64,000 nt of DNA, from IMG/VR virus record IMGVR_UViG_3300044972_002389, positions 124,001 through 188,000 of that record. One strand, given 5' to 3'. The notes under the pieces were generated by a model. It worked only from the letters and a program-made list of their open reading frames with translations. It had not been told where the DNA came from and searched no databases. Numbering within the stretch: position 1 is the first letter of the stretch; each line of letters starts with the position of its first letter. Positions 5,516 through 51,864 of this stretch are shown here, one piece after another. Both the position numbers and the translations under genes were made by a program.

Positions 5516-6103
5516 ATGACCAACAAGCCTCAGAAGATCGTTGTTCACAAGCACGCCGCCAAGCGGTTGTTTCATGTGAGCATTCACAATGTTGACAGCA
5601 AGGCTGCTAACACCACTTGGCAGGGTATTGCAGGCAAGAGCCGTTATGCATATGAACAGGGCTTGGTAGGCAACTACAAGAACGATCGCGTTCTCACTGG
5701 TGGGCTGATGCTGGCTTTTGTCAACACCCAATATGAGGGTTGGGAAACACAGGACGTGGAGGGCGAGTTTCCCAACATGATCCGTGCTGCTGAACACAAG
5801 GAACAGGTGGCGGATCAGCTGATCCAGGAGGGTCTTACAAACGTTGGTGTGCGCAATGTGAACAGCAAGCGCGATCCCAGCAGTGATGGCATGGGCAGCA
5901 ACTGGAACGCCAAGTTCAACCCCAACCGGATGACAATGGCCAAGGTGAACGAGAAGATTGACTGGATCAACACAAGCCTGCAGATGAACATCTCTCGAGA
6001 CGTTCGGAGCCGGGCACTGCGGGCAGTGATTGGTGCTAACGGCAATGTGGACAGCATGGCTGGCCTGCTCCGCTTCATCCGACAGGAAATGGGCCTGGTT
6101 TGA
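5516..6103 (+). CDS. hypothetical protein
   Basis: GGAG RBS, long ORF behind a promoter. Confidence 0.75.
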   Translation: MTNKPQKIVVHKHAAKRLFHVSIHNVDSKAANTTWQGIAGKSRYAYEQGLVGNYKNDRVLTGGLMLAFVNTQYEGWETQDVEGEFPNMIRAAEHKEQVADQLIQEGLTNVGVRNVNSKRDPSSDGMGSNWNAKFNPNRMTMAKVNEKIDWINTSLQMNISRDVRSRALRAVIGANGNVDSMAGLLRFIRQEMGLV

Positions 6104-6396
6104 TGGCTGCTGTTTATCGGATCCTGCATGTGCCTACTAGCATGTATTTTTGCCCCAGCAGGGAAGTGCGAGTCAAGCTCGCAGACCTACCCAGCTATTA
6201 TGGCAGCGGCACGATTGCAGTAAAGAGCAATCTCAGCAAAACTGGTAAGACCTATCTCAAACTGCCTACCATCAAGCAAATTGGCCAAAGATACTACACT
6301 CACTTGTTCAATTCTGTGACAGACATGGCTCCTGGAACACATTACTGTGTGAGGGCTGTGGTGGTGGATGAGTGGGTGGTTGAGGAAATGGCATAA
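6100..6396 (+). CDS. hypothetical protein
   Basis: Start overlaps the previous stop. Confidence 0.65.
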   Translation: MMAAVYRILHVPTSMYFCPSREVRVKLADLPSYYGSGTIAVKSNLSKTGKTYLKLPTIKQIGQRYYTHLFNSVTDMAPGTHYCVRAVVVDEWVVEEMA

Positions 6397-6405
6397 AGTT
6401 TTTGG

Positions 6406-6434
6406 TTGACACATAGCTACACCTAGTCTAATGT
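6406..6434 (+). promoter_or_regulatory. sigma70-type promoter
   Basis: TTGACA-N17-TAATGT. Confidence 0.6.
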
Positions 6435-6465
6435 GCGTTGATAAGACAGTTTTTGTGAGGACGAG

Positions 6466-7677
6466 ATGAGCAAGTTCAGTTGCCCTGTGGTGCGTGTGGC
6501 CGCAGTCGAAGAACATCCGAATGCGGATCGCCTTTCTCTTGTGCGCCTTGAAGGCCTCGGTTATCTCTGCATCGCAAACAAACTAGAGGATGGTAGCCCG
6601 CGCTACAAGCCCGGTGACTGGGTCGTATACATTCCCTCAGCCTCGGTGCTGCCTGAATGGCTGCTCAAGGACATGGGATTTTGGAACGAAGACGCTGGTA
6701 AGGGTGTGCTGGCAGGCAGTGATGGCAACCGTGTGAAGCCACTCAAGCTGCGTGGTATTTTCAGCGAAGGTGTGCTGTATGGGCTCATTGCATATGGTGA
6801 TGACGATTGCCTTTCTGCTGATTTTGGGTCGGCGACGGATGTACATGTAGTAGGCAAAGACAGTCTTGAATATCCAGTCAAGCTAGGCGAGGATGCTGCT
6901 GCAATCTTGGGCATCACCAGGTGGGAGCCGCCCATTCCCGCTGCGATGTCTGGTGAAGTTGCCAGTGTTGCTGAGGCTGCTCTTACCTACGATTTTCAGC
7001 GTTGGGAGAGCGTGCCTGACATCTTCGAACCTGGTGAGGTGGTGGTGGCCCAAGAAAAAATTCATGGATCTTGTACCATCATCCAGTACTTCCCAGGCAT
7101 GGACCATCCCGAGATGTTCCCCGACCATGCAGGCTACCGCAGCATCACTGTCAGCAGCAAGGGACTAGGCGGTCAGGGTTTGGTGTTCAAGAACAACGAA
7201 GCCAACGCCAACAACCTCTATGTGCGGGCACTTGGCACACTGCTAGCCGACCATGACCTCGCCGGGCTCCTCCACAGGATGAGCAAGGTGGACGGCGGTG
7301 CTCATCCGGTGGCTATCCTGGGAGAAGTTTTCGGCAAGGGCGTGCAGGACCTCGACTACGGCACCACTAAGCCCACGTTCCGGGTGTTCGACATGCGGAT
7401 CGGGCGGGAGTGGCTAAGTCCCGATGCCGTGGCCTACTGGGCAAAGGACCTGCCCTGTGTACCTACCCTCTACACTGGCCCCTTTGACCAAACTGCCATT
7501 GAGGCTGTGAGAGACGGTGTCACAACGGTGGGTGGCACCAATGTGCGGGAAGGTGTGGTGGTGCGCAGCCTGGTTCCCACCGAGCATCCCCTGCACGGTA
7601 GGAAAATCTGCAAATTCATCTCTCCGGCGTATCTGCTCCGCCGAGTGAAGAACGGCGAGGCAACGGAGTTCAACTGA
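6466..7677 (+). CDS. RNA ligase, DRB0094/Rnl5 family (N-terminal OB/tRNA-binding-like domain)
   Basis: N-terminal HPNADRL; nucleotidyltransferase motifs EKIHG, GEVFG, FRVFD, REGVVV, KFIS. Confidence 0.9.
   Translation: MSKFSCPVVRVAAVEEHPNADRLSLVRLEGLGYLCIANKLEDGSPRYKPGDWVVYIPSASVLPEWLLKDMGFWNEDAGKGVLAGSDGNRVKPLKLRGIFSEGVLYGLIAYGDDDCLSADFGSATDVHVVGKDSLEYPVKLGEDAAAILGITRWEPPIPAAMSGEVASVAEAALTYDFQRWESVPDIFEPGEVVVAQEKIHGSCTIIQYFPGMDHPEMFPDHAGYRSITVSSKGLGGQGLVFKNNEANANNLYVRALGTLLADHDLAGLLHRMSKVDGGAHPVAILGEVFGKGVQDLDYGTTKPTFRVFDMRIGREWLSPDAVAYWAKDLPCVPTLYTGPFDQTAIEAVRDGVTTVGGTNVREGVVVRSLVPTEHPLHGRKICKFISPAYLLRRVKNGEATEFN
7582..7677 (+). repeat. Copy 1 of a 96-bp diverged direct repeat (RNA ligase 3' end)
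   Basis: Ungapped 79/96 identity to 8086-8181 (hand count). Confidence 0.9.
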
Positions 7678-7759
7678 TGCGCTACGATCTACTGGAGGTC
7701 TACTGCTGCCTATGCCCAAGTCCCTAGACATATTGATCCCAGAAACAGAAACTTTCTGG

Positions 7760-7787
7760 TTGACAATGTCCGGAACTGTGCTAATAT
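7760..7787 (+). promoter_or_regulatory. sigma70-type early promoter
   Basis: TTGACA-N16-TAATAT preceded by TGC. Confidence 0.7.
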
Positions 7788-7814
7788 GACGTATAATACA
7801 TAAAGGACTAACAA

Positions 7815-8087
7815 ATGAGCGATCTCCCCAAGCCTATGTTTGCTAACGTTGGCCGCGCGTATGTGGCTGCTGCCGCGTTGGGTCTAGACACTAGCAATCT
7901 CAGTCGTGATCGTGCTGATACTGTGCTCCGCGCGCTGGTCAAAATGCCTGGTTGGCTGGAACAAAACCTGGATGTGTATCAGATGTGGATGGCTGATGTT
8001 GACCCCTGGCATTGCTTCATCCGTGACCTGAGCGCGTACACCAAGCAAGTGCGGGCTCACACGAAAGCTACCACGCGGGCCAAGTGA
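7815..8087 (+). CDS. hypothetical protein between the two ligase 3'-end copies
   Basis: AAGGA RBS and its own promoter. Confidence 0.75.
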   Translation: MSDLPKPMFANVGRAYVAAAALGLDTSNLSRDRADTVLRALVKMPGWLEQNLDVYQMWMADVDPWHCFIRDLSAYTKQVRAHTKATTRAK

Positions 8088-8181
8088 GTATCGACTGCAT
8101 AGCAGGAAAATCTGCAAGTTCCTCTCTCCGTCATATCTTCTCCGACGGGTGAAGAACGGTGAAACAACAGAGTTCAACTGA
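8086..8181 (+). pseudogene. Copy 2: orphan RNA ligase C-terminus EYRLHSRKICKFLSPSYLLRRVKNGETTEFN*
   Basis: No start codon; diverged duplicate of the last 31 ligase codons plus stop. Confidence 0.85.
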
Positions 8182-8193
8182 GTCGGGGCCACG

Positions 8194-8472
8194 ATGACCG
8201 AAAACTATATTCTCTTGAAATGGGGCACACTCAAGGGCTATCGGGTAGCTGACAACCCTGTGGCGCAAGGTTTGATTAAACAGTACATGGAGTTGGGTGC
8301 CAGCGCCATGCACCAACAGGACACTCCCGAACAAAAACAAATCATATGCGAACTGCTGCCTGCTCTGGCGTGCCCGCGCCGTGCCTTCCCCAACCCATAC
8401 GACCCCACAGGGCTGCTGCACTGGATCGCAACCCAGGAGCCGGTCATTCTCGGACGCGACCCCGCTGGCTAG
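8194..8472 (+). pseudogene. Chimeric ORF: phage gene 5' half (to ...KQIICEL) fused in frame to the 3' end of a high-GC bacterial gene
   Basis: Abrupt GC and codon-style change at about 8355 inside the ORF. Confidence 0.65.
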
Positions 8473-9640
8473 CCGGCTGGCCATTTCAGGATGCCGCCAT
8501 GTCACGCCGCTTTCTCGTTACCGGAGGTGCCGGCTTCGTCGGCAGCCATCTCGTCGCCGCCCTGCTGGACCAAGGCGCGGAGGTGGTGGTGTTCGACAAC
8601 CTGCGCACCGGCCATCGCGAAGCCGTGCTCCCCGGCGCCACGCTGGTCACCGGCGCGCTGGAGGACCCCGATGCGATCGCGTCCGTGCTGGCGCAGGGGC
8701 CGTGGCATGCGGTGTTCCACTTCGCCGCGCTGTCGCTGGTGGGCGATTCCATGCGCGACCCGATCGGCTATCTCTCGGCCAATGTCGGCAACGGCCTGCG
8801 CCTGTTGGAGGCCTGCGTGAAGCACGGCGTGCCCCGCTTCGTGTTCTCCTCCACCGCCGCCCTGTTCGGCACGCCAGACCGCATGCCGATCGACGAGGAA
8901 ACCGCGATCGACCCCGGCTCACCCTACGGCGAAAGCAAATGGATGATGGAGCGCGCGCTGGGCTGGGCCGAACGCATCCACGGCATGCGCTCCGCCTGCC
9001 TGCGCTACTTCAACGCCGCCGGCGCCGACCCGCAGGGCCGCCTGGGCGAGGACCACACGCCGGAAACCCATCTGATCCCGTTGGCCATCGACGCCATGCT
9101 CGGCCGTCGCGCCGAACTCGCCGTGTTTGGCACCGATTACGACACGCCGGACGGCACCTGCATCCGCGACTACATCCATGTCACCGACCTCGCCGCCGCC
9201 CACCTCGCGGCGCTGGAGCGGCTGGACCACGCCAGCGTCACCTACAACCTCGGCACCGCCGCCGGGCATTCGGTGCTGGAGGTGATCCAGAGCGTGGAGC
9301 GCGTCAGCCGCCGCCCGGTGCCGCACCGCTTCGCCCCACGCCGCCCTGGCGACCCCGCCCGCCTTGTTGCCAGCCCGGCGCGGATCATGCGCGAAACCGG
9401 CTGGCAGCCGCGCCTCGCAGCACTGGATGACATCGTCGCCACCGCCCTGGCCTGGCGCGAAGCCCATCCGCGCGGCTACGGCGGATGAGTTACCGCATCC
9501 CGGCGCATCGGCCTGTGCGTGTTCTCAGAAGTGCATTTTTCACCTACTTATGTCCTCATCCGCCCAGCCGCCGCAGCGAGGACCGCCACGCCATGAGCCA
9601 GCCTGCCGCGACCACGGTCGCCAAGAACCTGGGCGCATGA
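8356..9640. other. Foreign high-GC (~70%) bacterial DNA segment
   Basis: Sampled 60-nt lines are about 75% GC against about 50% in the flanks; both ends cut genes; no transposase or terminal repeats seen. Confidence 0.9.
8499..9488 (+). CDS. galE: UDP-glucose 4-epimerase
   Basis: LVTGGAGFVGSH, FHFAALSLVGDS, FSSTAA, YGESK, LRYFNAAGA, GEDHTPETHLIP, DGTCIRDYIHV, YNLG. Confidence 0.97.
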   Translation: MSRRFLVTGGAGFVGSHLVAALLDQGAEVVVFDNLRTGHREAVLPGATLVTGALEDPDAIASVLAQGPWHAVFHFAALSLVGDSMRDPIGYLSANVGNGLRLLEACVKHGVPRFVFSSTAALFGTPDRMPIDEETAIDPGSPYGESKWMMERALGWAERIHGMRSACLRYFNAAGADPQGRLGEDHTPETHLIPLAIDAMLGRRAELAVFGTDYDTPDGTCIRDYIHVTDLAAAHLAALERLDHASVTYNLGTAAGHSVLEVIQSVERVSRRPVPHRFAPRRPGDPARLVASPARIMRETGWQPRLAALDDIVATALAWREAHPRGYGG

Positions 9641-9709
9641 CGCTGGAAGTCCTGCATGGAGTTTCCCAACCAAGAAACTTATCTGCAATGTTTGCTCACA
9701 TGGAGTTGA
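9641..9709 (+). pseudogene. 3' remnant of a Trp-rich family gene cut by the galE segment
   Basis: RWKSCMEFPNQETYLQCLLTWS* matches the family register. Confidence 0.65.
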
Positions 9710-9778: not shown

Positions 9779-9806
9779 TTGACACAGTCTGTCTGTGCTG
9801 TATATT
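9779..9806 (+). promoter_or_regulatory. sigma70-type early promoter
   Basis: TTGACA-N16-TATATT. Confidence 0.7.
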
Positions 9807-9830
9807 GAAGCTACACAAGGAGAACAACAA

Positions 9831-10313
9831 ATGGAAGCCACGCCTGATCTAGCTGTCTACGTGCTGGCCCGAACTGATCTGCCCAGTATGAACCCAGGAA
9901 AGCTGGCTGCACAAGTACATCATGCTGGAACCCAGATGATGAGCCTATTTGCAGATCATCCACTAGTTCAACAGTATGTTGCCGACGGTGTCTCACAAGG
10001 TGCCTACTACTTCAACACCACAATTGTGCTGGGTGCCACAATGGACCAGCTTCATGGTCTGAGATGCACTTATGGTTGGGAATACCACCTCACTGTCAAG
10101 GGGTCAGTCGTCGACCCCAGCTACCCATTTTTTGTGGAAAATCAAGAGGTAGCTGATCTTGTTGCAGCTAATGGCAAGGCAGCTGTCATCAAAACCATGG
10201 ATGATGGGCGTGTGCTGATGACTCGCCAAGAGACCACTTGCATTTGGTGCCTTGTGGATCGCAACAAGCCCGAAGTTTCAGACATTCTAGGCCATCTCAA
10301 ACTCTATCCCTAA
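9831..10313 (+). CDS. Peptidyl-tRNA hydrolase type II (PTH2)-like protein
   Basis: VYVLARTDLPSMNPGKLAAQVHHA matches the PTH2 N-terminal signature; AAGGAG RBS. Confidence 0.7.
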   Translation: MEATPDLAVYVLARTDLPSMNPGKLAAQVHHAGTQMMSLFADHPLVQQYVADGVSQGAYYFNTTIVLGATMDQLHGLRCTYGWEYHLTVKGSVVDPSYPFFVENQEVADLVAANGKAAVIKTMDDGRVLMTRQETTCIWCLVDRNKPEVSDILGHLKLYP

Positions 10314-11974: not shown

Positions 11975-12255
11975 CAGAAGACAGAGTCTTCCACAATGCG
12001 CTGCTTTTGTTTCCCAAAGATCTTTTCTGCTGCTCTGTTACACTTGGCGAGGAATACTACCGCCAACAATACGAAATCTTGGATTGGCTACGCCAACAAG
12101 GACCTGGTGACACTGGAATTGGTGATCCACCACAAGGTGAGTGCGTTTGGGCATATACACAGCTTTTTGGATACCAGTATATCGCTTTCCCCACTAGGGA
12201 ACTGGTGACGCATTTTCAGCTGGTTTGGCAAAACAACACAGGACATAGTGGTTGA
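11971..12255 (+). CDS. Trp-rich small protein family member
   Basis: WLRQQGP ... FPTRELVTHFQLVW. Confidence 0.7.
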   Translation: MTEDRVFHNALLLFPKDLFCCSVTLGEEYYRQQYEILDWLRQQGPGDTGIGDPPQGECVWAYTQLFGYQYIAFPTRELVTHFQLVWQNNTGHSG

Positions 12256-13030
12256 CACGGATGTGCAGACTCTGTATGTTGTGGGTGTTGCAAAGGAGAC
12301 GGATATGCGAATTGATGTGCCCAGCATCGTAAATGATCCCCAGATGAGAACCTTGCCCTATTGGCTGGAGGTATATCCCAATCAGGATCAAGCTCGCCGG
12401 GCTCGAGCACTGGCTCGCAAGGCGTATGATCGCACACGGCTAGCTGAGGTGCAGCGTTGGCGCTGCTGCTGGTGTCACTGCGAGATGCGTGGCGAACAAG
12501 GCTTCAAGAACAGTGCCACCATTGAGCACATCACTCCTCGCAGTTGTGGTGGCACTGACCACATCACCAACTTGGCTGTGGCGTGTGGCCGATGCAACAA
12601 CCGTCGAGGCAACACGCCCTGGGAAGATTTCCTGCAGGCTATGGAAATGAGTCGGCCCGCGCCTGAGACTGGCAGCTTTCGCTCACTGGCTTTTGAACGT
12701 AAGATGCGCCGAGAGGCTGCTGAGCAGAACAAGCGCATCAAGCAGTTGACTCATTTGGTGCGCAACCACGAGGTGCAAGCCACTGCTACTCAAACGCGAC
12801 GCGAACAGTGCAAGTCACTGGAAGCCCAATACTCAGACATGCTGCCAGGATTGCAGCTGGCTGGTTTCCAACGAGCCAAGAGGATGCGTCGCGAAGTTGA
12901 CCGTCAACTGGCACTGCAAGCCCTCTCACAAAAGGTCAGCAACCCTTTTGAAGTGGACAGTCGGCCCTGGCGCATCTACGAGCGTATGCGTAACAAGCAG
13001 AGTGTTGACACACTGCAAGCAGCCGCTTAA
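12248..13030 (+). CDS. HNH endonuclease-domain protein with a long helical C-terminus
   Basis: CCWC...ATIEHITPRSCGGTDHITNLAVACGRCNNRRG. Confidence 0.85.
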   Translation: MVDTDVQTLYVVGVAKETDMRIDVPSIVNDPQMRTLPYWLEVYPNQDQARRARALARKAYDRTRLAEVQRWRCCWCHCEMRGEQGFKNSATIEHITPRSCGGTDHITNLAVACGRCNNRRGNTPWEDFLQAMEMSRPAPETGSFRSLAFERKMRREAAEQNKRIKQLTHLVRNHEVQATATQTRREQCKSLEAQYSDMLPGLQLAGFQRAKRMRREVDRQLALQALSQKVSNPFEVDSRPWRIYERMRNKQSVDTLQAAA

Positions 13031-14402: not shown

Positions 14403-15620
14403 ATGCACTACACGTTTCCCGAGATCACGCACCTGGATCAAGTGCTGGAAGCTGTCCAGGGTGTGGAAGGCTTCATTGTAGCCCAGCGGCCCTGGGGCAC
14501 TGTGGTCAACTACATTCAGATGGGCCCGGACATGTTCCCCGAGGTCCATACTGCTGGAGGCAGCGCCAGCATGCGCGAGCGGCAGACTCGACTCAAGGCT
14601 ATCCGCCGGGAGTGTAGGGGGCTGCTGTTCAGCCTTGATGGAAAGTTGGTGAGCCGCGCATTTCAGAAGTTTTGGAACGTGGGCGAACGGCGCGAGACTT
14701 TGATTGAAAACATCGATCTCACTCAGCCACACATCATCCTTGAGAAGTTGGATGGAAGTATGATTCGTGCTCTACCTCTAGGTAAGGGCTACTGTCTTGC
14801 AACCAAGATGGGGCCCACTGCTGTAGCAGCACAGGTTGAGCCGTTCGTGGCAACTCGAGACAACTATGACCGATTTATCCGAGACACACTGGAGCAGGGA
14901 TACACTGCCTGTTTCGAGTGGTGTACTCGTCAACAAAAGATTGTGTGTGATTATCCAGTTGATCGACTGGTGCTGACTGCTGTGCGTCACATCAACTCGG
15001 GTGAGTATCTCACCTACTCTCAGATGCAGGAACTGGCGGCCGAGTATGAGCTGGATCTAGTCAAGGCCTATCCTGGTACTGTGGCTAGCATGGAGCAGCT
15101 CGTTCGGGAGACGCATGAGCTGGAAGGCGAGGAGGGGTGGATCATCCGGTGGGATGATGGACATATGGCCAAGTTGAAATCGGCCTGGTATGTGCGTATC
15201 CACCGTGCCAAGGATGCTCTCACGCAGGAGAAGAACCTCATCGACCTCATGCTGGCGGAAAAGCTGGACGACGTCAAGAGCTTTCTGCCTGTGGAGGACC
15301 TGGCTCGCATCGACGCCTACGAGAACGCCTTCTGGACGGGTGTGGGGCAAACTGCCTACATATGGAAGGACCAGTATGTCAAGCTCCGGCGGCAGTTTGG
15401 TGACGATAGAAAGCGGTTTGCACTGGAGGCAGCACCGGGTCTTGAGCCCAACCTGCGTAGTGCTGTGTTCAAGGTCTGGGCCCGTGAGGGCCACGTGGAC
15501 TGGCGTGAGCTGGTGTGCGATGTGATCCGCAAATGCACTGGCACGCAGACCCGGGTGGACGAGGCACGCTCACTGTTCCGTGCGCCGCGGTGGAGCCAGC
15601 AAAGTGTGGGAGACGAATGA
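14403..15620 (+). CDS. T4 Rnl1-like RNA ligase
   Basis: FQKFWN, EKLDGSM, FEW, EGWII, AKLK. Confidence 0.9.
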   Translation: MHYTFPEITHLDQVLEAVQGVEGFIVAQRPWGTVVNYIQMGPDMFPEVHTAGGSASMRERQTRLKAIRRECRGLLFSLDGKLVSRAFQKFWNVGERRETLIENIDLTQPHIILEKLDGSMIRALPLGKGYCLATKMGPTAVAAQVEPFVATRDNYDRFIRDTLEQGYTACFEWCTRQQKIVCDYPVDRLVLTAVRHINSGEYLTYSQMQELAAEYELDLVKAYPGTVASMEQLVRETHELEGEEGWIIRWDDGHMAKLKSAWYVRIHRAKDALTQEKNLIDLMLAEKLDDVKSFLPVEDLARIDAYENAFWTGVGQTAYIWKDQYVKLRRQFGDDRKRFALEAAPGLEPNLRSAVFKVWAREGHVDWRELVCDVIRKCTGTQTRVDEARSLFRAPRWSQQSVGDE

Positions 15621-26126: not shown

Positions 26127-27359
26127 ATGAAAAAGTTATCCTTACATAGTATAGTAGTTTTGATTGGTCCCACTAAGAGTGGCAAAAGCACATGGGCCCA
26201 AAACCAGTTTGACGCTGATGAAATCATAAGCCTTTCTTCAATCAAGAAAGAGTTGACAGGCAACAATTCAACAGTGGATATTTTGCCAAATATTTGGCAC
26301 GAACTCTATCGTAGAGTTGATATTCGTATCGCCAACGGGCAACGTGCAGTAGTTGATTCCACTAATCTAAAAGACAAGGACAGATTTACTTTTCTTGATA
26401 TTGCCGAAAAGTATGGTGTGGAAGTCTATTACAAACCTTTTGACCTTGAATGGGGCACAATACAGCAAAACTCTGGTTCTTGTTATGACTTTGACTCTTT
26501 GAGAAAAAGCTATAGTATATGGAAAAATGCTCGCACACAGGTGTTACAGGGCGATAATAAACGAGCTGTTGTGCTGTGTGGTGACGAAACCACTGTTGGA
26601 TTTCCAAATGAATTGCAGAGTGCAAGGATTTTAGCAGTAGGCGATGTTCATGGCAATTTTCCAGCTATGCAGCAGGCAGTGCAAATGGCACAACAGTTAC
26701 ACGCAAAGCTAGTGTGGCTGGGAGATATTGTGGACTATGGCGCCAATAATCTCAAATGTTTGAAACTTGCATATGACACTGTTCGAGACGGGCAAGCACT
26801 TATGATTTGGGGAAATCACGAAAGAAAAATTGATCGCTGGATTAGGAGCGACTTGGGTGAAACCTTTAATGGCAAACTTAGCGAGTCAAATCTATCTACT
26901 ATAAGAGAAATCAACAGTTTGAATGACTTGCGGAAAAAGAAGTTTCTTGCAGCTTGGACAGCACTAAGAAACTGGAGTTTTAACCACCTAACAGTGGGAA
27001 AATTTTTGTTTACTCATGGTGCAGCAACACCTGCCATGTGGGCCAACAAGGATCGCAGATTGCAAGGTGTTTGTGCAAATATGGCCTATTTTGGTGAGGT
27101 AGACACTGTTTCACCGACCAAGAATGATGGATATCCAAACCGTATCTGGAATTGGGTTCAAAACATACCTGCTGATCATACTGTTGTTGTAGGGCATGAT
27201 TGGCTTGATCGTGTCAGTTACAACGTTGTGGAAAAAGCAAATTCTTGTGGCGGCCGGGCATTTGTTACAGATTGTGGTAGCAGCAAAGGCGGTCGTTTGG
27301 GTGCACTTTTTGTTGATCAACATAGCAAAGAAGTTTTGCCTTACTATTTTGACACTTAA
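26127..27359 (+). CDS. Polynucleotide kinase-phosphatase (P-loop kinase plus calcineurin-like phosphoesterase; Pnkp-like without a ligase domain)
   Basis: GPTKSGKS, VVDSTN; GDVHG, GDIVDYG, GNHE, THG, VVGH. Confidence 0.85.
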   Translation: MKKLSLHSIVVLIGPTKSGKSTWAQNQFDADEIISLSSIKKELTGNNSTVDILPNIWHELYRRVDIRIANGQRAVVDSTNLKDKDRFTFLDIAEKYGVEVYYKPFDLEWGTIQQNSGSCYDFDSLRKSYSIWKNARTQVLQGDNKRAVVLCGDETTVGFPNELQSARILAVGDVHGNFPAMQQAVQMAQQLHAKLVWLGDIVDYGANNLKCLKLAYDTVRDGQALMIWGNHERKIDRWIRSDLGETFNGKLSESNLSTIREINSLNDLRKKKFLAAWTALRNWSFNHLTVGKFLFTHGAATPAMWANKDRRLQGVCANMAYFGEVDTVSPTKNDGYPNRIWNWVQNIPADHTVVVGHDWLDRVSYNVVEKANSCGGRAFVTDCGSSKGGRLGALFVDQHSKEVLPYYFDT

Positions 27360-32935: not shown

Positions 32936-32942
32936 TATTTAT
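32936..32942 (-). promoter_or_regulatory. late promoter ATAAATA
   Basis: Overlaps the stop of the 4017-aa gene. Confidence 0.55.
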
Positions 32943-35900
32943 GCTGGTATCGACCCAGGTTGTGACAACAAAAATTGAGCTTGGTAAGTGCTGCTATATT
33001 GTAGCCCTAGTCCACCATAAGGCCACTGATACCCACCTGGGATAACTTGCCGCACACTACCATCTCGCACTACGCTGGTAGTTGGGTGAGACATAGCTGT
33101 TGTTTTCCAGTCTTGTTTGAAGATTATAAGTCCAATATTTTTATTGCCTGCAGGAGGTGGTTCAAAAATTGGAGCCAATGTCTGAGAGGGGAATTGCAGA
33201 TAAAATCCAGGGGCTGCATTTGAGGGGTTGCTTACTAGCATCCAATCGTTTTGGAGCTTGCCATCCACAATAACATACGCATTTACCATTCCTGCTTGCC
33301 ATTCTCCTGCGTTTGTAATAGTTACAGGATACAAATCACTGTTGCCTGTGCTACTCCAATACTGTGCCACAAATTTATCACTAATGCCGCCAGGTGTTCC
33401 CAGTGTGCCACGATTGATTTTTCTCAAAACAGCTTGGTTAGGAAATGCAGTTGAGGCCGCAGGAGCTTTGTCAAAATATTCAATTCTTTCACCCTCAATC
33501 CAAATAACCCCAGGTCGTTTGTCATCAGGTTCAAGAAGAGTGTCGCCATTTGCTACAAAAATTTCCTGATCATTCCAGTTCAACACCTGAGTAAGAACGG
33601 TCCTGTCCTGATTCCCAAGGCGTAGGTATTGTGTGTCGTTATACACATTTGTCACAGCACGGAATGCAACACCATCTTTGCTGGGCAACGCTGTGGGATA
33701 ATAGGCTTGAATCTCATCAGCTGCTGTCAAAGTGTAATGATTTCCTAACTTTAGGTACCAACTGTTTCCGGTTTTGACTATGGTATAGTCTAAAATCCAG
33801 CTTAAGCTACTGCCGTTGAGCCATACTTGCACACTTTGGAACTCCAACGGAGTATTGGTGAATAGGTATTGGTTGCTGGAATCACCTGTCCAGACATCGT
33901 TATAAAAGGCACTTGCGCTGTCTTCACCCCAAGTTCTTACAACAATAGTATCGCCGTCAACCACCGCCCAACTTGCCAAAAGTAGGTTTGTTCCTTGGAT
34001 TTGATAATCATAGTTTTGGGCGACTGGATCAGCCACTTCAATGTAAATGAAACTTTTATCTGATGGCGCTGTAGTGAATATTATTTGATTTCCAGCCAAT
34101 GTATATTCTGTGTTAGGCAATACTGAGGCATTTAACCAAACTTGAATAAATGACCCAGGATCTGGGAAAATAGCCAAATTATATGCTGTTGTGTTGTTGT
34201 CACCAATTGCACTCAAAAGGTAGGGTGGCTTCAATCGCTTGCCGTTACTGTAGACCAGTGCATTGTTACTTTGTGCAGGATTGAATCCGCTCAAGGGATT
34301 ATTTGGTGTATTCAAATTCAGCGGATACGTGAGCAATGGCAAGGTTACTACCAAACTCTGTAATTTTTGTAGACTTTGATATTGACTGCTGTATACCAAA
34401 ATTACAATAGTGTCGCCAGGCAAAGGTGTAAATCCCAGTCCAATTTGACGATTGTCGGCAGGGTTTACACCAAAACTCACTGTAGGCACTCCATTCCAAG
34501 TCATCAGAATAGTGTTAGCGCCTATGGGTTGATCCATTGTGATCACAAAACTTGTGATGTCAAAAACAACAGTTTTAGTTTCTTGAATATGGCTGGAATA
34601 GTTAGCAATGCTGAACCCTGTGCCAGTACCAGGTGCTCCACCACTTATGGTTACACCCACTTGTTGGAGGCCAACATTCTTATTCAAATAACTACCACGA
34701 GTCAACGGCAAGATGCTGGCTACTCCCCATTGTGGAGTAATCAACCCTCCTATACCTGTTCCATTTGTATACCATTCATTTTGACTTATGCTGGGCTGAG
34801 TATAATAGCCTTGATTTACAATACTCACAGCAGTAATTTGTCCAGCTACACCACCAAAAGCAGTAGTGCTGTCAACCTTGATTACCAAAGTTTGCGTTCC
34901 GCTCCCGTATTTGAAATACAAGAGATCTCCTACCTTGTAGCCAGATCCTGGCTGATTTACATTTACAGCAGTTGCACGTATTGCAGTGACTAACACTGTT
35001 GTAGATGTGTAGCTCTGTGATGTATCACTTAACACGATAGTATCGTTCAAGTTGTAATCAATTCCTTGATTTACTATGCTCCAATTTCCGAGACCAGGGG
35101 TTGCTCCACCAAAACCAAAGCTGGTAATTACAACTGATCCCACTGGCGGGAAAACAAAAACAATGCTATTGCTGCTGGGATCATATACATAATCAGAGGT
35201 TGGTCCTAGAGTTTTCAAAATTCCGCCTACACTGACAATAATGTCAGCAGCACTGAACACTGGTTGGCCAATATAAAATCTATCAGTAATGCTGTCGCCA
35301 AGCCAACTTTCAGACAACACATTCCCAAAGCCCACTGTGGGTTGATTGGCAACATCTATTATCAAGGTTTCTTTTCCTTGAAGCGGGAACAACTCTTCAG
35401 GATGATTGCCTTCCACATGTGGTCGACTCAACCCCTGTCCATCATATACAGCATCAAGCGTGCCTCCTAGGGCACTTTCAAATGTGCTGCCTGCTTCTGC
35501 TACCCAAATGTTGGGTTTGGCTACAGCACTAAGTGGCGCCAGTGCAAATTCAAGACTTGTGCCGCCCCAACGTAGGACAAAGGTGGCATTTACGCCTGAA
35601 CCGCCAGAGGCTTGCACTGCTGTTCCACTGGGAGTCAGTGTGTATGCCCCTGGAAAGACCACCTCAATTTTCAAAATTGCACCTGTCAAACTTGTGTTGA
35701 CTACTTTCAGCTGAGCAGGAATAGTATAAGTGCCTCCAGATACAGAGAGTATATCATTTACACTATATCCTAATCCTTGATTAGCAACATCCACAGCAGT
35801 TATCCAGTTTTTGACTGTCCAATTGAGAGGAGTGTTTTGAAGATTACCATTTACCCAAACACGCAAGTCATTTGGAGCTTGTGGGGCCTGAGGCAGGGCA

Positions 35901-38900
35901 AACTTTGTTTGCAGCCCGTCCCCTTTGAATACCCAATATTGTGGCCTTGCTCCACCATTTATGTATTGATCAAATAACCGATCAACTTCTTGGCTAGTGT
36001 TGTCCCAGCCCAATACGCCATCCCACACTGGCTCGCCCCAACGACCATTTAGATTGAAATCCAAACCATCCAACACTGTTCCTTTGGGAGCACATCCACT
36101 GATCAGTAAGGGATCATTTGGAGGAGGCATGCTAGGAGTGGGCTGATACAACTGTTGAATTCTGTCTGCTGCTCCGTTATCCAGTTGATATCCAACCAAT
36201 TCAAATATGCCTTGATTGAACACAAACAAACTCCAAAGCCCAATGTTGTCGTAAATTACTTTGATTATTTCTCCATTAGGCAAGTTTGTCAGAGCTTTCA
36301 TTTCTTCGATAGTGTCAATAAACCTATTTGGCACAGTATTCTCGCTGTATCCAGGACTGTAATAGTCTTCTGCGGGCACACACGCCAGTCGGTCCAACAC
36401 AATTTTTGTCCTTGTGCTGCGTACACTGAGGTTTGCTATATCAAATACAGTCACAGTAACAATATCTCCAACACCTGGTGTGAAGTTGAGTTCAACGAGA
36501 GTGCTGTCGTCTAAATTTATCTCATAATCATTAGTTAATAAGTTGTTCCATCGAACTTGTGTAAATTGCCAAGTTATGGGATTTGTCATGCTTACTATTT
36601 GAGAAATGCCGTCACCAATAAATGTCTTACGCTCAAGATAGCTAGATGCGTATACATACGCCTGCACAACATCGTTAGTGTTAGGCACAAAGACCAAATC
36701 AATTATTGAGTTGTCTCCAGGACGCAAATTCCAAGCTTGAGAAAGCTTGCTATTCCAGTATACCAAAACATTTTCAGGTTTGGTGCTAGTGCTTAGTTGA
36801 AGAGATTTGGTTGATCCGTTACCAGTTAAGGTCACTGTTTCAATCAATGCACCACTGCTGGCTTTGTAGTTGTCGTACCACGGCTTGTATATGGTATCTC
36901 CGGACAAAATCGCAAGATCAACTGGGTTACTGACATTCAAGATTGAAACATTATTGTTCAGGTCAATATAGGGAGGGTTATCCAAATCGCTGCTGTTGCT
37001 TTCCCAATAGTCCGAGACCACTCTGTAATCCACAAATTGGCGTATGACAACGTGGTAGGGTTTAACCTCTTGAATATATTTTTCCAAGCTGTCTATTTTA
37101 CTTGGGTCATAATAGGCTGAACTCAAGAGTTGTTGGCTGAAACCTTTCAAATTGATAAAGCTTGTTTTGAAACACCAATCTACGAAATTTTGTTCAGCCA
37201 GCACATGGCTCACTAGCTCAAAAAATACCATGTTACGTTCATTTACATCACTGTCAACTTTCAAAAGTCCCACAGCTTTGTTGTTTTCAGGCCACAATCC
37301 CTGCAAAATATAGCTCAATTCTAGGCGTGTATCATACTCCCAACCTTGATAATCAACTGCATAACTTCCTCCACTGAAGCCCATGCTGTACTTTTCGTAG
37401 TCATAGAGATTGTCACTGAGTTGTAGATTGCCGTTTTGTACACCTACTACGGTCCATAAGGTTTCAGAATCAGGCGTGTATTCAAAAAGATTCCAACGGC
37501 CATTGCCTGTATTCAACACTTTGACCAAAGTTCCAGAGTCAACCACAAGAGTGTCACGGTCAGCCAAAGTGGCAACAGTAGCCCCAATCAGGGTGTCGGC
37601 ACTGATGCCGCTGGCATACCAATCTACCAAGTACCAAACTTGGTTAGTGTCCCATGCTTGCATACGCTCTAATGAAAACTGGTTTTGTCCTTGATAAAGC
37701 CAAATGGTCCAGCGGTTGTTGGTGGCAGCACTTACATCTACCAAAACTTTGTTACCAGGTATTAGGCTGGGAATCAAAGCATCTCTTGCCGCCAAAGTAG
37801 CTACGTAATAATCCCAATTGCAGGGCAATATGCCTTTTACTGGCCGTACAATTTGCCACTCTAGGGGATCAATTCCCAATTTCAAAATGTTCTTGTTGTT
37901 TTGAATATAGGTTGTTGGCAATAGCTGTGATGCACCTTCCAAAACCAACACTTGTGCATCTATTAGGTTGTCATCTATGCTGTCAAAATCTGCAGACCTC
38001 ATCAAGATCCATGGATTGTTGAGCGAGCCAATGTCCACTACATCATAAATTCCATTTTGATTAGGTGTTTGTGTGACAATAGAGCTGGTAAGAGTAACTG
38101 GATTTTGATTTTTAACAATTATTCGGTCTCCCAAATTTACTGTTATACCATCAACAACCAATGCACTATAAGATGAGCCATTATAGGTTAAGGTAGCACC
38201 CTTGCCATTTTCCCCAGGATAGTAAACAGTGTCTAGAGCAGTTGTGGTTGCCACTCGAGCATTGGCTTTGGTATTTTTTTGGAGAGGCTGTGGCTCTACG
38301 CTCTGAAAATACTGTAACCAGCCAAGCCTGTCAGGGTCATCCAATGGCGGCACACTGCTGCTGCTAAGGAGGCTGTTGATTTTTTTAACAAAAGCTCTCC
38401 TAGCAGTAATACCATCCTTGAACCAACTTTGTGAAGGTCGTGTCAGCATGCCATACTTGCTCATTTCAGGCAGTCGCAAATTGGGAACACTGTTGCCTAC
38501 GTTGTTGAATTCCACAAGACTATCACACATTTTGCTCCACAAATCTAGTGTAGGTGTGCTCAAAGGATCGTTGGGTCTCAACAATGTCCACTCTTTGTAG
38601 ATTTTATCTACATTTTCTCTACTTGTATAATTCACTTGCCAGACAGTGTTGTTTTCATCCAAGAAACTGCCAATGTTTGCTAACAATGCGCCTGTGCTGC
38701 TGATTGCGGCCCACCAGCTTTGGTTTTGTGTTTGTGGACTTTCAACAATTTGACTCAAAGATGCAACACTTATCTTGCGATCTGGCACGTTGGGCACTGT
38801 GGTTTTGTTTTTTACCCAAAAGTAATAGGCATTTGTGTATTGGCCGCTTTCATTACGCTCACTTGCCAACACGTAGGGATAATCAGCACCTTTTACTGAT

Positions 38901-41900
38901 CCTGTAGGGGTTTGATCTCCCCCTGTGGCTGCTGAGTTGCCCGCTGTAACAGCGCCTGCCCAAGATGAAGGAGGCACAAGGCTTCGTATCCATTCATAAA
39001 TGTCAATGCTGATTCCTGGAGCAATTTGTCCCCAATGTCTCCGGCGGTAGCTGTCTGTTCCAATTTCATAATCAATAAACCTTGTTGTGCTTAAATCCCA
39101 CCAAGTTTGCCCCACTTGGTTTGGGCCCCACGCTGTAGAGGGGTCAACTTGATACAATCTTGAATCTCCAGCATTATAGCTCGCTGGATCCCAGTGTGTG
39201 CGATATGTTACTTCCTCATTTACAAGCCCTGGCAATGCACCTTTGCTGGGGTCCCAAATATTCAAATGAGCTAGTGTTTGTAATGTTGTTTTGTTATAAA
39301 GTGTGCTGGTCAATAATAGGCTGGTGTCAACTTTCTTGTCTTCTCTGCGATATTCAAACCAGACACCATATTTTTGATAGACTTTCCAAGGTTCATCTTG
39401 ATTACCATCAACATAGGCAAAATCTCTTTGTGTCCAACCACCAGGAGGGGTTGCGTTATTGAATGCAGCATATGTGGGAAATCTTATACTCCAGTATTGT
39501 AACACTTGTCCATTGGCACCAGTAGCAGAGGTGGTTGCCTGCACATCAAAAGTATTCCTAGTGACATTGAAAACTGAAAAAGTACCATCCAGTCTACCAT
39601 TTACCCCTGTAACTCCGCTCAATACAAGGATGTTGCCATTTTGCAGATTGTGAGGCAAGCTGGTTGATATTGTTGTTTGATTCAATGTTACAGGAGTAGT
39701 TTGTTGAATTTGCCAGGCTGGCCGGCATACTTTGTAAATGTTCCATCCAATAGCAGTGTCAATAAATTGCCAAACTCTGTCATGTGCCTGCAAGGGAGTA
39801 TTTTTAGTTTCAAGAGTTTGAGAGAGACTAAACAACTCTGCTTGATCTTTGACATAATAAGTGGCCTCGGAAAATAACACGTATCCGCTGTTTGGCAAAT
39901 CCCCTGGGGCTGAACCGTAGTGGCTTCTCAATGAGAAGTTTGGCGTTGCCTCACTTTTATACAAGACTCTACTGTCTTTGGGGGTTATTGTAATTGTGTC
40001 GTCATAAGCCAAATCTTCAATAGAGCCAGAGAAAAACTCAACCAACTGCGGATTACTTCTCACTTCAGTTTGCAGTAGCAGCACGTCAATGCCGTGAATA
40101 AGTTCGTTGCTGCCATAAGTACCCAAACGGAAAGCGTACTCTTCGTAGTAGCTAAAGCTTTCATTGGCATCAACCAGTTGAGTGTTTCGCAACAAACTAT
40201 CAATAGTGCCTTTTGTGCCTTTTTGTTTGATCATGCCTTGATAAAATTGAAACTGTGTGGTTTCATCCACAAGGAGATTGGTCAAATATTCGCGTTGTTG
40301 ATAGCCCACTAAGTGAGTAGCCAACATGTTATATCTTTTAGGCAAGGCTTGCGACAGTGCGCTGGTGGCATTTGTATGCATCCCTGTGCTGTCGCTGTAA
40401 TTGTAGGGAGTTGGCACATCTATGTTGTATAACTTGCGAATATCGTCAACAGTTTTTTCAAAGTTAGCTAAGATCTGGTTATTGACAATTATCCGATCAC
40501 CAATGGTAGATGTGGTTTGTGTTACTAGATAACCAGGCGCCTCAAGACGGCCTGCCCAGTCCATGCTCTTGTAAGTCTGTATCTTGAATCGGCTTTGTCT
40601 TACGTCAAACAGTGGGTCATACACAATATCGCCAAAAATTGTTTTGTTTTGGAACAGGAGTGCATGTTCAAGGCCAGTAGTGTAGAGTCTAATGCCAAAA
40701 ATGCCTTGATCATTCAAAGGTCTTACTGAAACTTGATCATCAATGCGCAAGAAATCTATATTTTGGACTTGAATTGGTCGTCCGCCACGATCTAAAATCG
40801 TGTAGCTGCCATTTACTATGCCGCCGATGTTTTGAATAGTTCCAAAACTTGTGACAAATTTTGTTTTGAGTGCCAAAGGACTCAAGGCAATGTAATTGCC
40901 TGCTGCCCAAGGTCCTTGACTCCAGAACAAGAACTCTCGGCCGCTCAGGCTCCAATCTTGCAATTGGCCAGTGGTGCTGGAATATTCATCAAAAATCCAA
41001 CCTTGGCTGACTTGCCAACGCCCCAAGCTTACCAAAAAGTCAAATACATCTTGCTGTGTAGGCAAAATGGTACCATACGGCACTTTTTTAACAGATGGCA
41101 ACCCCAGCTTGTATTCAATAACCTTGATTTTGTCTACAATCACTGTTGTTTTTGGACCAGTAAGGTTACTGGGAATTACATAAAAGTTGGGATCATAGCT
41201 GTCGTATCCAATGACTCGGTAACCCTCAGATCCTCTATATTCCACAATTACGCCGCTATAGAAGAACTCTTTTAAGCTGGCACTGCGTATGAGATTGTTG
41301 GTCACATCTTCTTGGGGGATCAACAAACTGTCGTTGGAGCTTAGACCAAAGCTGTCAACCAAAAGCTTAACACTTGTGCCATCAATAAATCCTCCAGCTC
41401 TGTATCCTAGAGTTACATCACTGTTGCGGATAACATTACCAAAATATTCTGTGACGGAACGACTGTCATTTATCAAATACTCACTTATCCAGTGTTGAAT
41501 GCCGCATGATCCATAATAGCTTAAGTCACTGCTTAAGGTTGTTACATTTTGTGGATCTTCACGATGAACAAAAATGTCACTGTTGCTGATTCTTTTCCTG
41601 TAATCCTTCCAAACCCATTGACTGTTGGTTTGTGTGGCAAAAATCTGTTGGGCCCGTGGGCCGTCCCAGAGGTATTCAATAAATTGCGCTGGCTTGGCCA
41701 GATATCCTATCTGCGCCCAAATTTGGTCACTGTCAACTGCTGTAAGCCAGACATTTTCCAAAGGACCGCGGTCCCCAAATTTCCAATCGGCCCGGGCTTC
41801 AATTTCGCTAGGCAATGTGGTGACTATGCGAGCTGGACCAGGAGGCAACAGTTGCCCAAATTCGTCCACTGGCAAATATTGCATCAACCCAGGACGAGCA

Positions 41901-49922: not shown

Positions 49923-50381
49923 ATGATTATGACCAAAGGTGAGCTGCTAGGCAAGTGTTTGGTTTTTGCCACCAACGCACATGCTGGTCAGTTTGACAAG
50001 GGAGGTGCTCCATATTTGCTCCACGTCCTAAAGGTTATGCACTATTTGCGCACCGAGGACGAAGAGCTGCAATGCATTAGTTTGCTCCACGACGTGTGTG
50101 AAGATACTGATGCCACCTACGCTGATCTCAGAGATATTGGCTGCACCGAGCGTGTGATTGCGGGCGTGAGGGCACTGACCAAAGTGCCGGGTGAAACACT
50201 CGACGAATACAAGGCTCGAGTTTTCGCCAACCCCGATGCCATGCGTGTGAAAAAGTGCGACCTGCGTCACAACTCGGATATCCGGCGCTTGAAAGGTGTC
50301 ACAGAGAAGGACATTCGGCGCATGGCTCGCTACCATGAGTTTTACCTGGAGATTTGCGAGCGACTCAAGCTAGCTGATTGA
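49923..50381 (+). CDS. HD-domain phosphohydrolase (Mesh1/SpoT-hydrolase-like)
   Basis: AHAGQFDKGGAPYLLH, LLHDVCED, VKKCDLRHN. Confidence 0.85.
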   Translation: MIMTKGELLGKCLVFATNAHAGQFDKGGAPYLLHVLKVMHYLRTEDEELQCISLLHDVCEDTDATYADLRDIGCTERVIAGVRALTKVPGETLDEYKARVFANPDAMRVKKCDLRHNSDIRRLKGVTEKDIRRMARYHEFYLEICERLKLAD

Positions 50382-50405
50382 CAATCCAATCAATACTGCT
50401 ATAGT
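50378..50405 (+). promoter_or_regulatory. sigma70-type early promoter
   Basis: TTGACA-N16-TATAGT preceded by TGC. Confidence 0.75.
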
Positions 50406-50426
50406 GCTGGGGAAAGGAACACGCTG

Positions 50427-51014: not shown

Positions 51015-51021
51015 GGGTCAC

Positions 51022-51840: not shown

Positions 51841-51864
51841 CATACTCTCTGCCACTGCTATAAT
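51837..51864 (+). promoter_or_regulatory. sigma70-type early promoter
   Basis: TTGACA-N16-TATAAT preceded by TGC. Confidence 0.85.

What the first reader, a model, noticed from the sequence alone, without database searches (positions are those of the whole stretch)
7582..8181. RNA ligase 3' end duplicated as a synonymously diverged allele flanking a promoter-gene cassette
Seen in sequence: 7582-7677 and 8086-8181 align without gaps at 79/96 nt. Of the differing codons, 8 are synonymous and 6 change the amino acid, mostly conservatively. Between the copies lie a short stub ORF, a strong promoter and one 90-aa gene. Inference: both copies evolved as functional ligase ends in different lineages. 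A 408-bp cassette arrived by recombination within the ligase gene, bringing its own replacement C-terminus (motif V) and pushing the old one downstream. This gene-end-replacement strategy is known from some mobile elements, but here the cargo has no evident nuclease.
Basis: partly seen in the sequence, partly recalled or inferred. Interest (0 to 1): 0.6.

Follow-up and report, generated by a model that had tools for sequence, protein, structure and literature searches.

The report
Ligase gene-end relic beside inserted gene
A lake-water giant phage carries a decaying second copy of the last 31 codons of its RNA ligase gene, a recombination scar left when a small promoter-plus-gene unit was spliced in just after the ligase; related phages show that this gene end is a repeated landing site for foreign genes.

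Summary
Window 7582-7677 and 8086-8181 match at 79/96 without gaps (chance about 1e-22). Copy 1 is the true end of an intact DraRnl/NgrRnl-type RNA ligase (6466-7677). Copy 2 has no start codon and carries changes at residues invariant in the ligase family. In relatives it has deletions and a stop, so it is a relic.

The c1-c2 differences are mostly synonymous (omega 0.11), so the two ends come from two functional alleles. The 'stub' (7677-7727) is the truncated 5' end of a DUF6980 gene that overlaps the ligase stop in some relatives. Copy 2 abuts orf92, as the intact ligase does in other relatives.

The mobile module is 7723-8061: a sigma70-like promoter plus a 3'-truncated orf90. It recurs at 86% nt identity in an otherwise dissimilar phage contig with no ligase nearby. 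The orf90 stop codon is created at the junction with ligase codon 373, and seven diverged relatives share that junction, so it arose once.

Two other cargos (an NTP-transferase gene and a two-gene block) sit at the same ligase end with their own tail relics. A NUMOD3 homing endonuclease occupies the slot in sister genomes.

Verdict: an illegitimate-recombination scar in a hyperplastic hotspot. This is a variant of known moron/PeSL/homing-endonuclease biology, of moderate interest.

The parts
6466..7677 (+). Intact RNA ligase gene (403 aa), N-terminal OB domain plus nucleotidyltransferase domain, DraRnl/NgrRnl (TIGR02306, 'Rnl5') type
   Evidence: Pfam RNA_ligase 1e-18 and PHA02142 OB 1e-05. 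There are 1736 homologues, and JGI names them TIGR02306. All family-invariant residues are present. Weak hit to Naegleria RNA ligase 5COT.
7582..7677 (+). Copy 1 (c1): last 31 codons plus stop of the ligase, holding the conserved HPxHGRK(I/V)xKxISPxYL block (motif V region)
   Evidence: Identical to the tail of relative L022.
7677..7727 (+). Stub ORF (MRYDLLEVYCCLCPSP*): truncated 5' end of a DUF6980 gene ('orfZ'). In relatives L028/L029/L039/L088 this gene is full length and overlaps the ligase stop as TGATG.
   Evidence: Junction alignment. Full-length orfZ in L028 is Pfam DUF6980, 6.5e-16.
7723..8061 (+). The transferable module: upstream leader, sigma70-like promoter (-35 at 7760-7765, extended -10 at 7780-7787) and orf90 codons 1 to about 83
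   Evidence: This is the only stretch of contig L085 that matches the window by blastn at 86% nt, apart from a 47-nt promoter-like match at 56982-57028. L085 has no ligase nearby. Its other genes match the own genome at <=42-64% aa or not at all. Promoter scan. The promoter is conserved in all relatives.
7815..8087 (+). orf90: small all-helical ORFan under purifying selection. It is 3'-truncated relative to the 121-aa form P0125, and its TGA (8085-8087) is created at the joint with ligase codon E373.
   Evidence: Only 7 protein clusters, 79-100% identical. omega 0.07-0.24. AF2 pLDDT 72.6, five helices. No Pfam, PHROG, Atlas or Foldseek match.
8086..8181 (+). Copy 2 (c2): promoterless, start-less relic of the last 31 codons plus stop of a second ligase allele, immediately upstream of orf92
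   Evidence: Its frame is open only from 8032, and the first start codon is a GTG 10 codons before the stop. It has H374Y, P375R, G378S and I385L at invariant or near-invariant positions. The same left junction occurs in 7 lineages, with deletions or a stop in L027 and L088. No RNA structure signal, z = 0.11.
8194..8472 (+). orf92: the downstream gene that directly follows the intact ligase in relatives L030/L044. Only its first 55 codons (8194-8358) are native here; the rest comes from the high-GC insert.
   Evidence: tblastn of relatives, junctions and alignment with L007.

Best explanation
Copy 2 is a non-functional, slowly decaying scar. It marks an old illegitimate (microhomology-level) recombination in a hyperplastic early-gene region of a freshwater jumbo phage.

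One parent had ligase - DUF6980 gene, with a foreign promoter-orf90 module joined after codon 16 of the DUF6980 gene. The other parent had ligase - orf92. A crossover joined orf90 at about codon 86-89 of the first parent to ligase codon 373 of the second. This could have been an unequal crossover between co-infecting genomes. Equivalently, a circle [ligase tail - stub - promoter - orf90] could have been excised and then integrated Campbell-style by homology in the ligase tail.

The product keeps a complete ligase (copy 1, donor-type end). It gains an autonomously transcribed orf90, and it leaves the recipient's old ligase end (copy 2) in front of orf92. Only recombinants that kept the ligase ORF whole would have survived, which is why a gene-end duplication is what we see.

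Shown: the relic status of c2, the two-allele origin, the module boundaries, the single shared junction, the recurrence with other cargos, and a homing endonuclease in the same slot in sister genomes. Inferred: the order of events; whether a circle or an unequal crossover was the intermediate; whether endonuclease cuts triggered it; and that later recombination inside c2 with intact ligase alleles moved the unit into new backgrounds.
For: (1) c2 is not a gene. It has no usable start, changes at invariant residues, an 11-nt deletion plus in-frame stop in L027, and a 31-nt deletion in L088.

(2) Two-allele origin. omega(c1, c2) = 0.11. c1 is followed by a DUF6980 stub, as in the ligase-DUF6980 genomes L028/L029/L039. 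c2 is followed by orf92, as in the ligase-orf92 genomes L030/L044.

(3) The module 7723-8061 is 86% nt identical to L085, which has a different context and no ligase. There orf90 is 121 aa long, so the window's copy is truncated exactly at the joint.

(4) The junction GCTAAGTGAG(T/C)AT is shared by W, L007, L023, L024, L027, L087 and L088, which indicates one event.

(5) A ligase-tail HMM finds second tails with three different left boundaries and three different cargos: the orf90 unit; the 349-aa plus 149-aa genes in L026; and an NTP_transf_2 gene in L034/35/64/65, with L054 as its empty site.

(6) Another joint sits at an 8-nt microhomology, TCAAGGGC, in L024.

(7) A NUMOD3 homing endonuclease overlaps the ligase 3' end in L024/L025/L088. 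GIY-YIG and HNH endonuclease genes and an intein interrupt the ligase in other relatives.

(8) The ligase gene itself is a fine-scale mosaic between close relatives, with 65-100% identity in 60-nt windows.

(9) Recombination between short repeats, and mini-circles carrying promoter-ORFan cassettes, are documented in T4-type phages (PMC2839356).
Against: Differences among the c2 copies still show a ligase-frame bias (omega 0.19-0.36 in frame, against 0.46-2.9 in the other frames). I attribute this to variation imported by recombination with functional alleles, but weak selection on c2 is not excluded.

No recombination intermediate, excision product or circle was seen. The four runs laid were assembled contigs only and showed no 504-bp skip.

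No homing endonuclease lies in this slot in the window itself, and no cleavage site is known.

No terminator bounds the module, so it is not a textbook moron or PeSL.
Confidence: 0.7

Rival explanations
1. Portable-arm cassette. The ligase tail is the working homology arm of a family of small cassettes. A unit [ligase tail - cargo - left part of relic] spreads into any co-infecting phage that has this ligase. It does so by homologous recombination within the tail, possibly boosted in trans by the homing endonuclease that cuts near the ligase end. The duplication would then be a propagation device and not just a scar.
For: Two cargo families keep a fixed cargo|relic junction while sitting in different ligase backgrounds and in front of different downstream genes. 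The orf90 unit is followed by orf92 (W, L007, L023), orf111 (L024), a DUF6980-like sequence (L027) or orf67 (L088). The NTP_transf_2 cargo occurs in 83%-type (L023) and 55%-type (L034/L064) ligase backgrounds. L024's c2 is chimeric: its left 39 nt resemble L023's c2, and the rest resembles the intact tails of L030/L044. The ligase-frame bias of c2-c2 differences fits repeated exchange with functional tails. PeSL mini-circles are a precedent.
Against: Any insertion flanked by conserved genes is passed on by ordinary phage recombination, so no special device is needed. The differing downstream genes could be later insertions. The relic decays in L027 and L088, which argues against selection for the arm. 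No circles or trans-homing were observed.
Confidence: 0.2
2. In-situ tandem duplication within one genome. A duplication spanning the ligase 3' end through orf90 is followed by divergence. c1 stays under purifying selection and c2 drifts.
For: A single unequal sister-strand exchange would give the same topology. The c2-specific hits at invariant residues show drift.
Against: 11 of the 17 c1-c2 differences are synonymous (omega 0.11). If one copy were drifting neutrally, a markedly higher omega would be expected. c1 and c2 carry different ancestral downstream junctions, DUF6980 versus orf92. The c2 copies of different genomes match different functional allele types.
Confidence: 0.06
3. c2 is retained for a function: as the translation-initiation or coupling region of orf92, or as a translated peptide or regulatory RNA.
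For: In ancestral layouts the downstream gene overlaps the ligase stop (TGATG), or its Shine-Dalgarno includes the stop (TGAGG). The last ligase codons therefore belong to the downstream gene's initiation region, which could explain why some tail is always kept. The shortest relics are 6 to about 30 nt. In L034 a 21-codon mini-ORF ends in TGATG.
Against: 96 nt is far more than an initiation region needs. There is no start codon in the window's c2 frame, no RNA structure (z = 0.11), and there are deletions in two lineages.
Confidence: 0.04

Closest known systems
PeSL cassettes (promoter-early stem-loop) and their mini-circles in T4-type phages (Arbiol et al. 2010, PMC2839356; PMC4122927)
   Same: A small ORFan with its own strong sigma70-like promoter, in a hyperplastic early region full of similar promoters (23 in this window). 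It shows presence/absence and replacement polymorphism between close relatives, and the same cassette is found in another genomic context. Movement is by recombination at short homologies.
   Different: Here the flanking repeat is a piece of a coding gene (the ligase tail) and not the promoter/stem-loop motif. No terminator stem-loop bounds the module in the window; a small hairpin upstream of the promoter exists in L007/L024 but is deleted here. Circles were not observed.
Morons of lambdoid phages (promoter + gene + terminator inserted between two genes)
   Same: An autonomous transcription unit carrying one accessory gene, inserted between two conserved genes, absent from relatives and of foreign origin.
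   Different: No terminator, the gene is truncated at the joint, and the insertion is accompanied by a 96-nt gene-end duplication.
Free-standing homing endonuclease genes and intronless homing in T-even phages (seg/mob genes), including genes split by endonuclease insertion
   Same: The same intergenic slot at the ligase 3' end holds a NUMOD3 homing endonuclease in sister genomes. The ligase gene of relatives is interrupted by GIY-YIG and HNH endonuclease genes and by an intein. There are mosaic co-conversion-like tracts around the site.
   Different: The window's cassette encodes no nuclease. Neither cleavage nor a target site was shown.
Campbell-type insertion-duplication, and integrative elements that rebuild the 3' end of their target gene (e.g. 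prophages and islands in tRNA genes)
   Same: Topology: an intact gene completed by incoming sequence, then the cargo, then a displaced truncated old end.
   Different: No integrase and no identical core sequence (the longest identical run between c1 and c2 is 14 nt). The copies differ along their whole length. The right joint truncates the cargo gene.

Membership tests
Moron | Own promoter directly upstream of a single accessory gene | tested here: met
   TTGACA-16-TAATAT with TG at 7760-7787. It is conserved with the gene in all relatives and in L085.
Moron | Own terminator downstream | tested here: not met
   No terminator-like site between 8087 and 8194. The fold of 8060-8200 is unremarkable, z = 0.11.
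Moron | Present in some and absent from other closely related genomes, between the same flanking genes | tested here: met
   Absent in L028/L029 (73% ligase) and in L030/L044, where the ligase directly abuts downstream genes.
PeSL cassette (T4-type phages) | ORFan flanked on both sides by copies of a conserved promoter plus stem-loop motif | tested here: inconclusive
   A promoter family is present: D2 repeat at 6392-6411 / 7746-7765 and 23 similar promoters. However, there is no stem-loop terminator in the window, and the repeats that flank the unit are ligase tails.
PeSL cassette (T4-type phages) | Formation of mini-circles by recombination between flanking repeats | not testable with these tools
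   Only assembled contigs were available for the runs, and no joint was seen.
Free-standing homing endonuclease cassette | Cassette encodes a homing endonuclease | tested here: not met
   orf90 has no Pfam, PHROG or fold match. The endonuclease is present only in sister loci L024/L025/L088.
Free-standing homing endonuclease cassette | Endonuclease cleaves the cassette-less allele near the insertion site | not testable with these tools
   Needs a cleavage assay.
Site-specific integrative element with gene-end replacement | Integrase/recombinase and an identical core (att) repeat at both ends | tested here: not met
   No recombinase between the copies. The copies differ at 17 scattered positions, with no identical core above 14 nt.
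Decayed tandem gene duplicate | Relatives with two full-length tandem ligase genes, or relics of varying extent upstream of codon 373 | tested here: not met
   The tail-HMM scan and tblastn of about 60 loci show that every orf90-unit relic starts at codon 373. No second ligase body was found.
DraRnl/NgrRnl-type (TIGR02306) RNA ligase (the host gene) | N-terminal OB domain fused to a nucleotidyltransferase domain with the lysine motif KxxG | tested here: met
   Pfam PHA02142 OB plus RNA_ligase. EKIHG with invariant K198. JGI names homologues TIGR02306. Weak hit to 5COT. Enzyme activity was not tested.

The most novel reading that the evidence does not exclude
The ligase-tail relic is more than junk. 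It is the right-hand homology arm of a class of nuclease-free promoter-gene cassettes, with at least three cargo types. These cassettes use the conserved 3' end of a DraRnl-type RNA ligase gene as a universal landing pad in freshwater jumbo phages. Each integration rebuilds the ligase end, and spread may be driven in trans by the homing endonuclease that targets the same site.
Probability: 0.2. Interest if true: 0.6.

Novelty: new variant of a known kind. Interest (0 to 1): 0.4.

Why it matters
The locus is a dated, well-resolved example of how giant-phage genomes gain small genes. Both recombination joints, the donor-like context, two kinds of empty site, and the later decay of the scar can all be read directly.

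The same ligase end has been hit at least three times by different cargos, each leaving a tail relic. It also hosts a homing endonuclease in sister genomes. This points to a natural insertion hotspot that could be used to study endonuclease-triggered or mini-circle-mediated gene flow in uncultured phages.

There is also a practical consequence. Such relics can mislead gene callers and duplication or selection analyses.

Tried and rejected
- blastn of 6000-9600 against 50,697 GenBank phages found no relevant hit, only two short matches inside the epimerase gene.
- orf90 function: Pfam, PHROGs, ESM Atlas and Foldseek-PDB on an AF2 model all came back empty. I leave it as a small helical ORFan under purifying selection.
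- Idea that c2 is read by a +1 frameshift from orf90 (AAG-TGA-G): rejected. There is no slippery sequence, and relatives have deletions or a stop in c2.
- Idea that c2 is a structured RNA or terminator: rejected.
- Idea that the window's c1 was gene-converted by c2 (shared RKICKF...EFN): not needed. The same tail type is common in functional ligases that have no relic.
- Excision between the copies: four lake-water runs were laid and no 504-bp skip was found. These were contigs only, which hide rare variants, so this is no evidence against excision.
- tRNA scan of the window: none found.
- A tblastn extension of the 121-aa orf90 form through L024's c2 was judged spurious low-complexity alignment.
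- Loci L063 and L066 come from human-gut metagenome assemblies. They are distant (39-40%) phage-like ligase contigs, took part only in bulk scans and were not examined further.
- One search used six 93-nt strings copied from the output. One search repeated the c2 comparisons by reference and gave the same values.
Full report
**Where this is.** The window is part of an IMG/VR virus record of 133,672 bp. CheckV rates it about 30% complete, which implies a jumbo phage of several hundred kb. Near-identical contigs reach 329 kb. The DNA occurs in at least 20 lake-water metagenome runs from different studies. The surrounding region on the + strand is a run of small genes, most with their own sigma70-like promoter. 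There are 23 promoters of the form GGTTGACA-N16/17-TGCTAtaaT in the window. The window also encodes a T4 Rnl1-like ligase, a kinase-phosphoesterase and a PTH2-like hydrolase, so the ligase studied here is part of an RNA-repair gene set.

- 7582-7677 and 8086-8181 are 79/96 identical without gaps.
- The chance probability is about 1e-22 after correcting for all position pairs, and the next best match is 44/96.
- Copy 1 (c1) is the last 31 codons plus stop of an intact 403-aa RNA ligase with an N-terminal OB domain (Pfam RNA_ligase and PHA02142 OB).
- The ligase belongs to a large family that JGI labels TIGR02306, and has a weak hit to the Naegleria ligase structure 5COT.

**Copy 2 (c2) is a relic.**
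- Its frame is closed by a stop at 8029-8031. It has no ATG, GTG or TTG until a GTG ten codons before its end.
- It changes H374, G378 and I385, which are invariant in 26 functional ligases, and the near-invariant P375.
- Among the seven lineages that carry it, L027 has an 11-nt deletion and an in-frame stop, and L088 has a 31-nt deletion.
- It shows no RNA-structure signal, and there is no terminator nearby.

**The two ends come from two functional alleles.**
- The c1-c2 divergence is dominated by synonymous change: 11 synonymous and 6 nonsynonymous, omega 0.11.
- The two copies carry different ancestral right-hand junctions. After c1 comes a 16-codon stub (7677-7727) overlapping the ligase stop as TGATG. 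In relatives L028/L029/L039/L088 the same TGATG overlap starts a full-length Cys-rich DUF6980 gene whose first codons align with the stub.
- After c2 comes orf92. In L030 and L044 the intact ligase stop overlaps the start of the orf92 homologue.
- So c1 plus stub derive from a 'ligase-DUF6980' genome, and c2 plus orf92 from a 'ligase-orf92' genome.

**What the inserted DNA really is.**
- orf90 has only very close relatives, 7 clusters at 79-100% identity.
- One of them, P0125, is 121 aa long with a Lys/Ala/Glu-rich tail. It lies on contig L085 among unrelated genes with no ligase.
- Apart from a 47-nt promoter-like match at 56982-57028, the only part of L085 that matches the window at DNA level is 7723-8061, at 86% identity. 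This stretch is the leader, the promoter and orf90 codons 1 to about 83.
- The other L085 genes match the window's genome at 42-64% aa or not at all. The module has therefore moved horizontally.
- In the window, orf90 is cut short. Its TGA stop (8085-8087) is assembled from one base plus the GA of ligase codon E373.
- orf90 is a real gene. omega is 0.07-0.24 across eight versions. The AF2 model is all-helical with pLDDT 72.6. Its function remains unknown.

**One old event, then spread.**
- The joint GCTAAGTGAG(T/C)AT between orf90 and ligase codon 373 is shared by the window, L007, L023, L024, L027, L087 and L088. The ligases of these loci are only 73-90% identical to the window's.
- What lies to the left of the unit varies. 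The intact ligase sits directly upstream in W, L007, L022, L027 and L087. An NTP_transf_2 gene intervenes in L023. A minus-strand NUMOD3 homing endonuclease plus a further scar intervenes in L024/L025/L088. In L024 that scar is the ligase stop plus 15 orf92 codons, fused at the microhomology TCAAGGGC to the last 8 ligase codons.
- What lies to the right of c2 also varies: orf92, orf111, a DUF6980-like sequence or orf67.
- The 3' part of c2 matches different functional allele types in different genomes. L024's c2 resembles the tails of L030/L044.

**The pattern recurs with other cargo.** A profile of the ligase tail finds second tails with three distinct left boundaries.

| Cargo | Loci | Relic |
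|---|---|---|
| promoter-orf90 unit | W, L007, L023, L024, L027, L087, L088 | 96 nt in the window |
| 349-aa plus 149-aa genes | L026 | 78 nt plus stop; the first 5 nt of the ligase-orf92 spacer are also duplicated |
| NTP_transf_2 gene | L034/L035/L064/L065 | 45 nt |

- L054 is the empty site for the NTP_transf_2 cargo, with the ligase followed directly by the next gene.
- L023 holds what looks like a shorter, decayed relic to the right of its NTP_transf_2 gene.
- Elsewhere the ligase gene is split by GIY-YIG or HNH endonuclease genes. It carries an intein at motif I that is broken into halves with a free-standing endonuclease between them. In L037/L075 it is preceded by a 25-codon 5'-end relic plus a MORN-repeat gene.
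- The ligase coding sequence is itself a fine mosaic between close relatives.
- The window's genome has two paralogues of the L024 endonuclease elsewhere.

**Mechanism.**
- The simplest account is one illegitimate crossover. It joined a genome carrying ligase-stub-promoter-orf90 to ligase codon 373 of a ligase-orf92 genome.
- Equivalently, a circle [tail-stub-promoter-orf90] was excised and integrated by homology in the tail. That route gives the same topology and has a precedent in the PeSL mini-circles of T4-type phages (PMC2839356).
- Selection then kept only products with a whole ligase.
- Endonuclease-made breaks at this gene end are a plausible trigger, but this is not shown.

**An open point.** Differences among c2 copies keep a ligase-frame bias: omega 0.19-0.36 in frame, against 0.46-2.9 out of frame. 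I read this as variation imported by recombination with intact tails. It is the main support for the more interesting rival, in which the relic serves as a portable homology arm. No excision product was seen in four runs, but only contigs were available.

**Verdict.**
- Supported: two functional alleles, the ligase end replaced, and the old end pushed downstream.
- Not supported: the 408-bp interval is not a single cassette with its own designed ligase end; the right joint truncates the cargo; the downstream copy is decaying; and nucleases do occupy this slot in sister genomes.
- It is a new variant of known phage mosaicism (moron, PeSL and homing-endonuclease hotspot biology), of moderate interest.

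Noticed in passing
window 8358-9653 (GalE-like epimerase ORF 8499-9488): A 63% GC block carrying a complete NAD-dependent epimerase (Pfam Epimerase, 4e-57) is inserted into orf92 after codon 55. Relative L007 lacks it and has 327 unrelated bp there. L023 has it at 99% aa. Run X20 holds a contig that skips 8354->9654, so both forms coexist in lakes. The best genome match is 84% aa to an Acetobacterales MAG, a possible host-lineage hint.
   Followed up: partly
L064:1005-3556, L065, L050:4001-5973 (relatives): The ligase is interrupted at the lysine motif (EKLHG|C ... VHN|S/T) by an intein. The intein is itself broken into separate N and C halves, with a free-standing endonuclease-like ORF (263-331 aa) between them. 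This is a 'fractured gene' / split-intein layout.
   Followed up: partly
L051:520-2655, L052, L054:2740-4807 (relatives): The ligase is split between its OB domain (111 aa) and its nucleotidyltransferase domain. The splitting insert is a GIY-YIG-like gene on the + strand in L051/L052 and an HNH-like gene on the - strand in L054. Different endonucleases sit at the same inter-domain position.
   Followed up: partly
L037:3288-5182, L075:4001-5130 (relatives): A mirror-image case. A relic of ligase codons 1-25 lies about 640 bp upstream of the intact ligase, with a 103-aa MORN-repeat-like gene in between. This is a gene-start duplication flanking an insert.
   Followed up: no
window 259-26069 and 50353-58043, + strand: 23 promoter-like sites share GGTTGACA-N16/17-TGCTAtaaT (extended -10). 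All are on the + strand, in two blocks, in front of small ORFs. This looks like an early-gene promoter family, and one of them (56982-57028) is 83% identical to an intergenic site in contig L085.
   Followed up: partly
window 14403-15620, 26127-27359, 9795-10313, 12248-13030: A second RNA ligase (T4 Rnl1-like; Pfam RNA_lig_T4_1, 7e-26), a kinase plus metallophosphoesterase protein (Pnkp-like), a PTH2-like peptidyl-tRNA hydrolase and an HNH endonuclease lie near the ligase studied. Together they look like an extended RNA/tRNA repair toolkit.
   Followed up: no
window 32939-44992, - strand: A single 4017-aa ORF followed by a 1126-aa ORF on the minus strand, in the 40-43% GC part of the window. 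Neither was examined beyond a Pfam scan of the 1126-aa ORF, which gave no match.
   Followed up: no
window 8298: Three of the four lake runs laid carry a 6-nt insertion (GCCAGC, Ala-Ser) in orf92 relative to the window, as does L007. This is a small in-frame repeat-number polymorphism.
   Followed up: no
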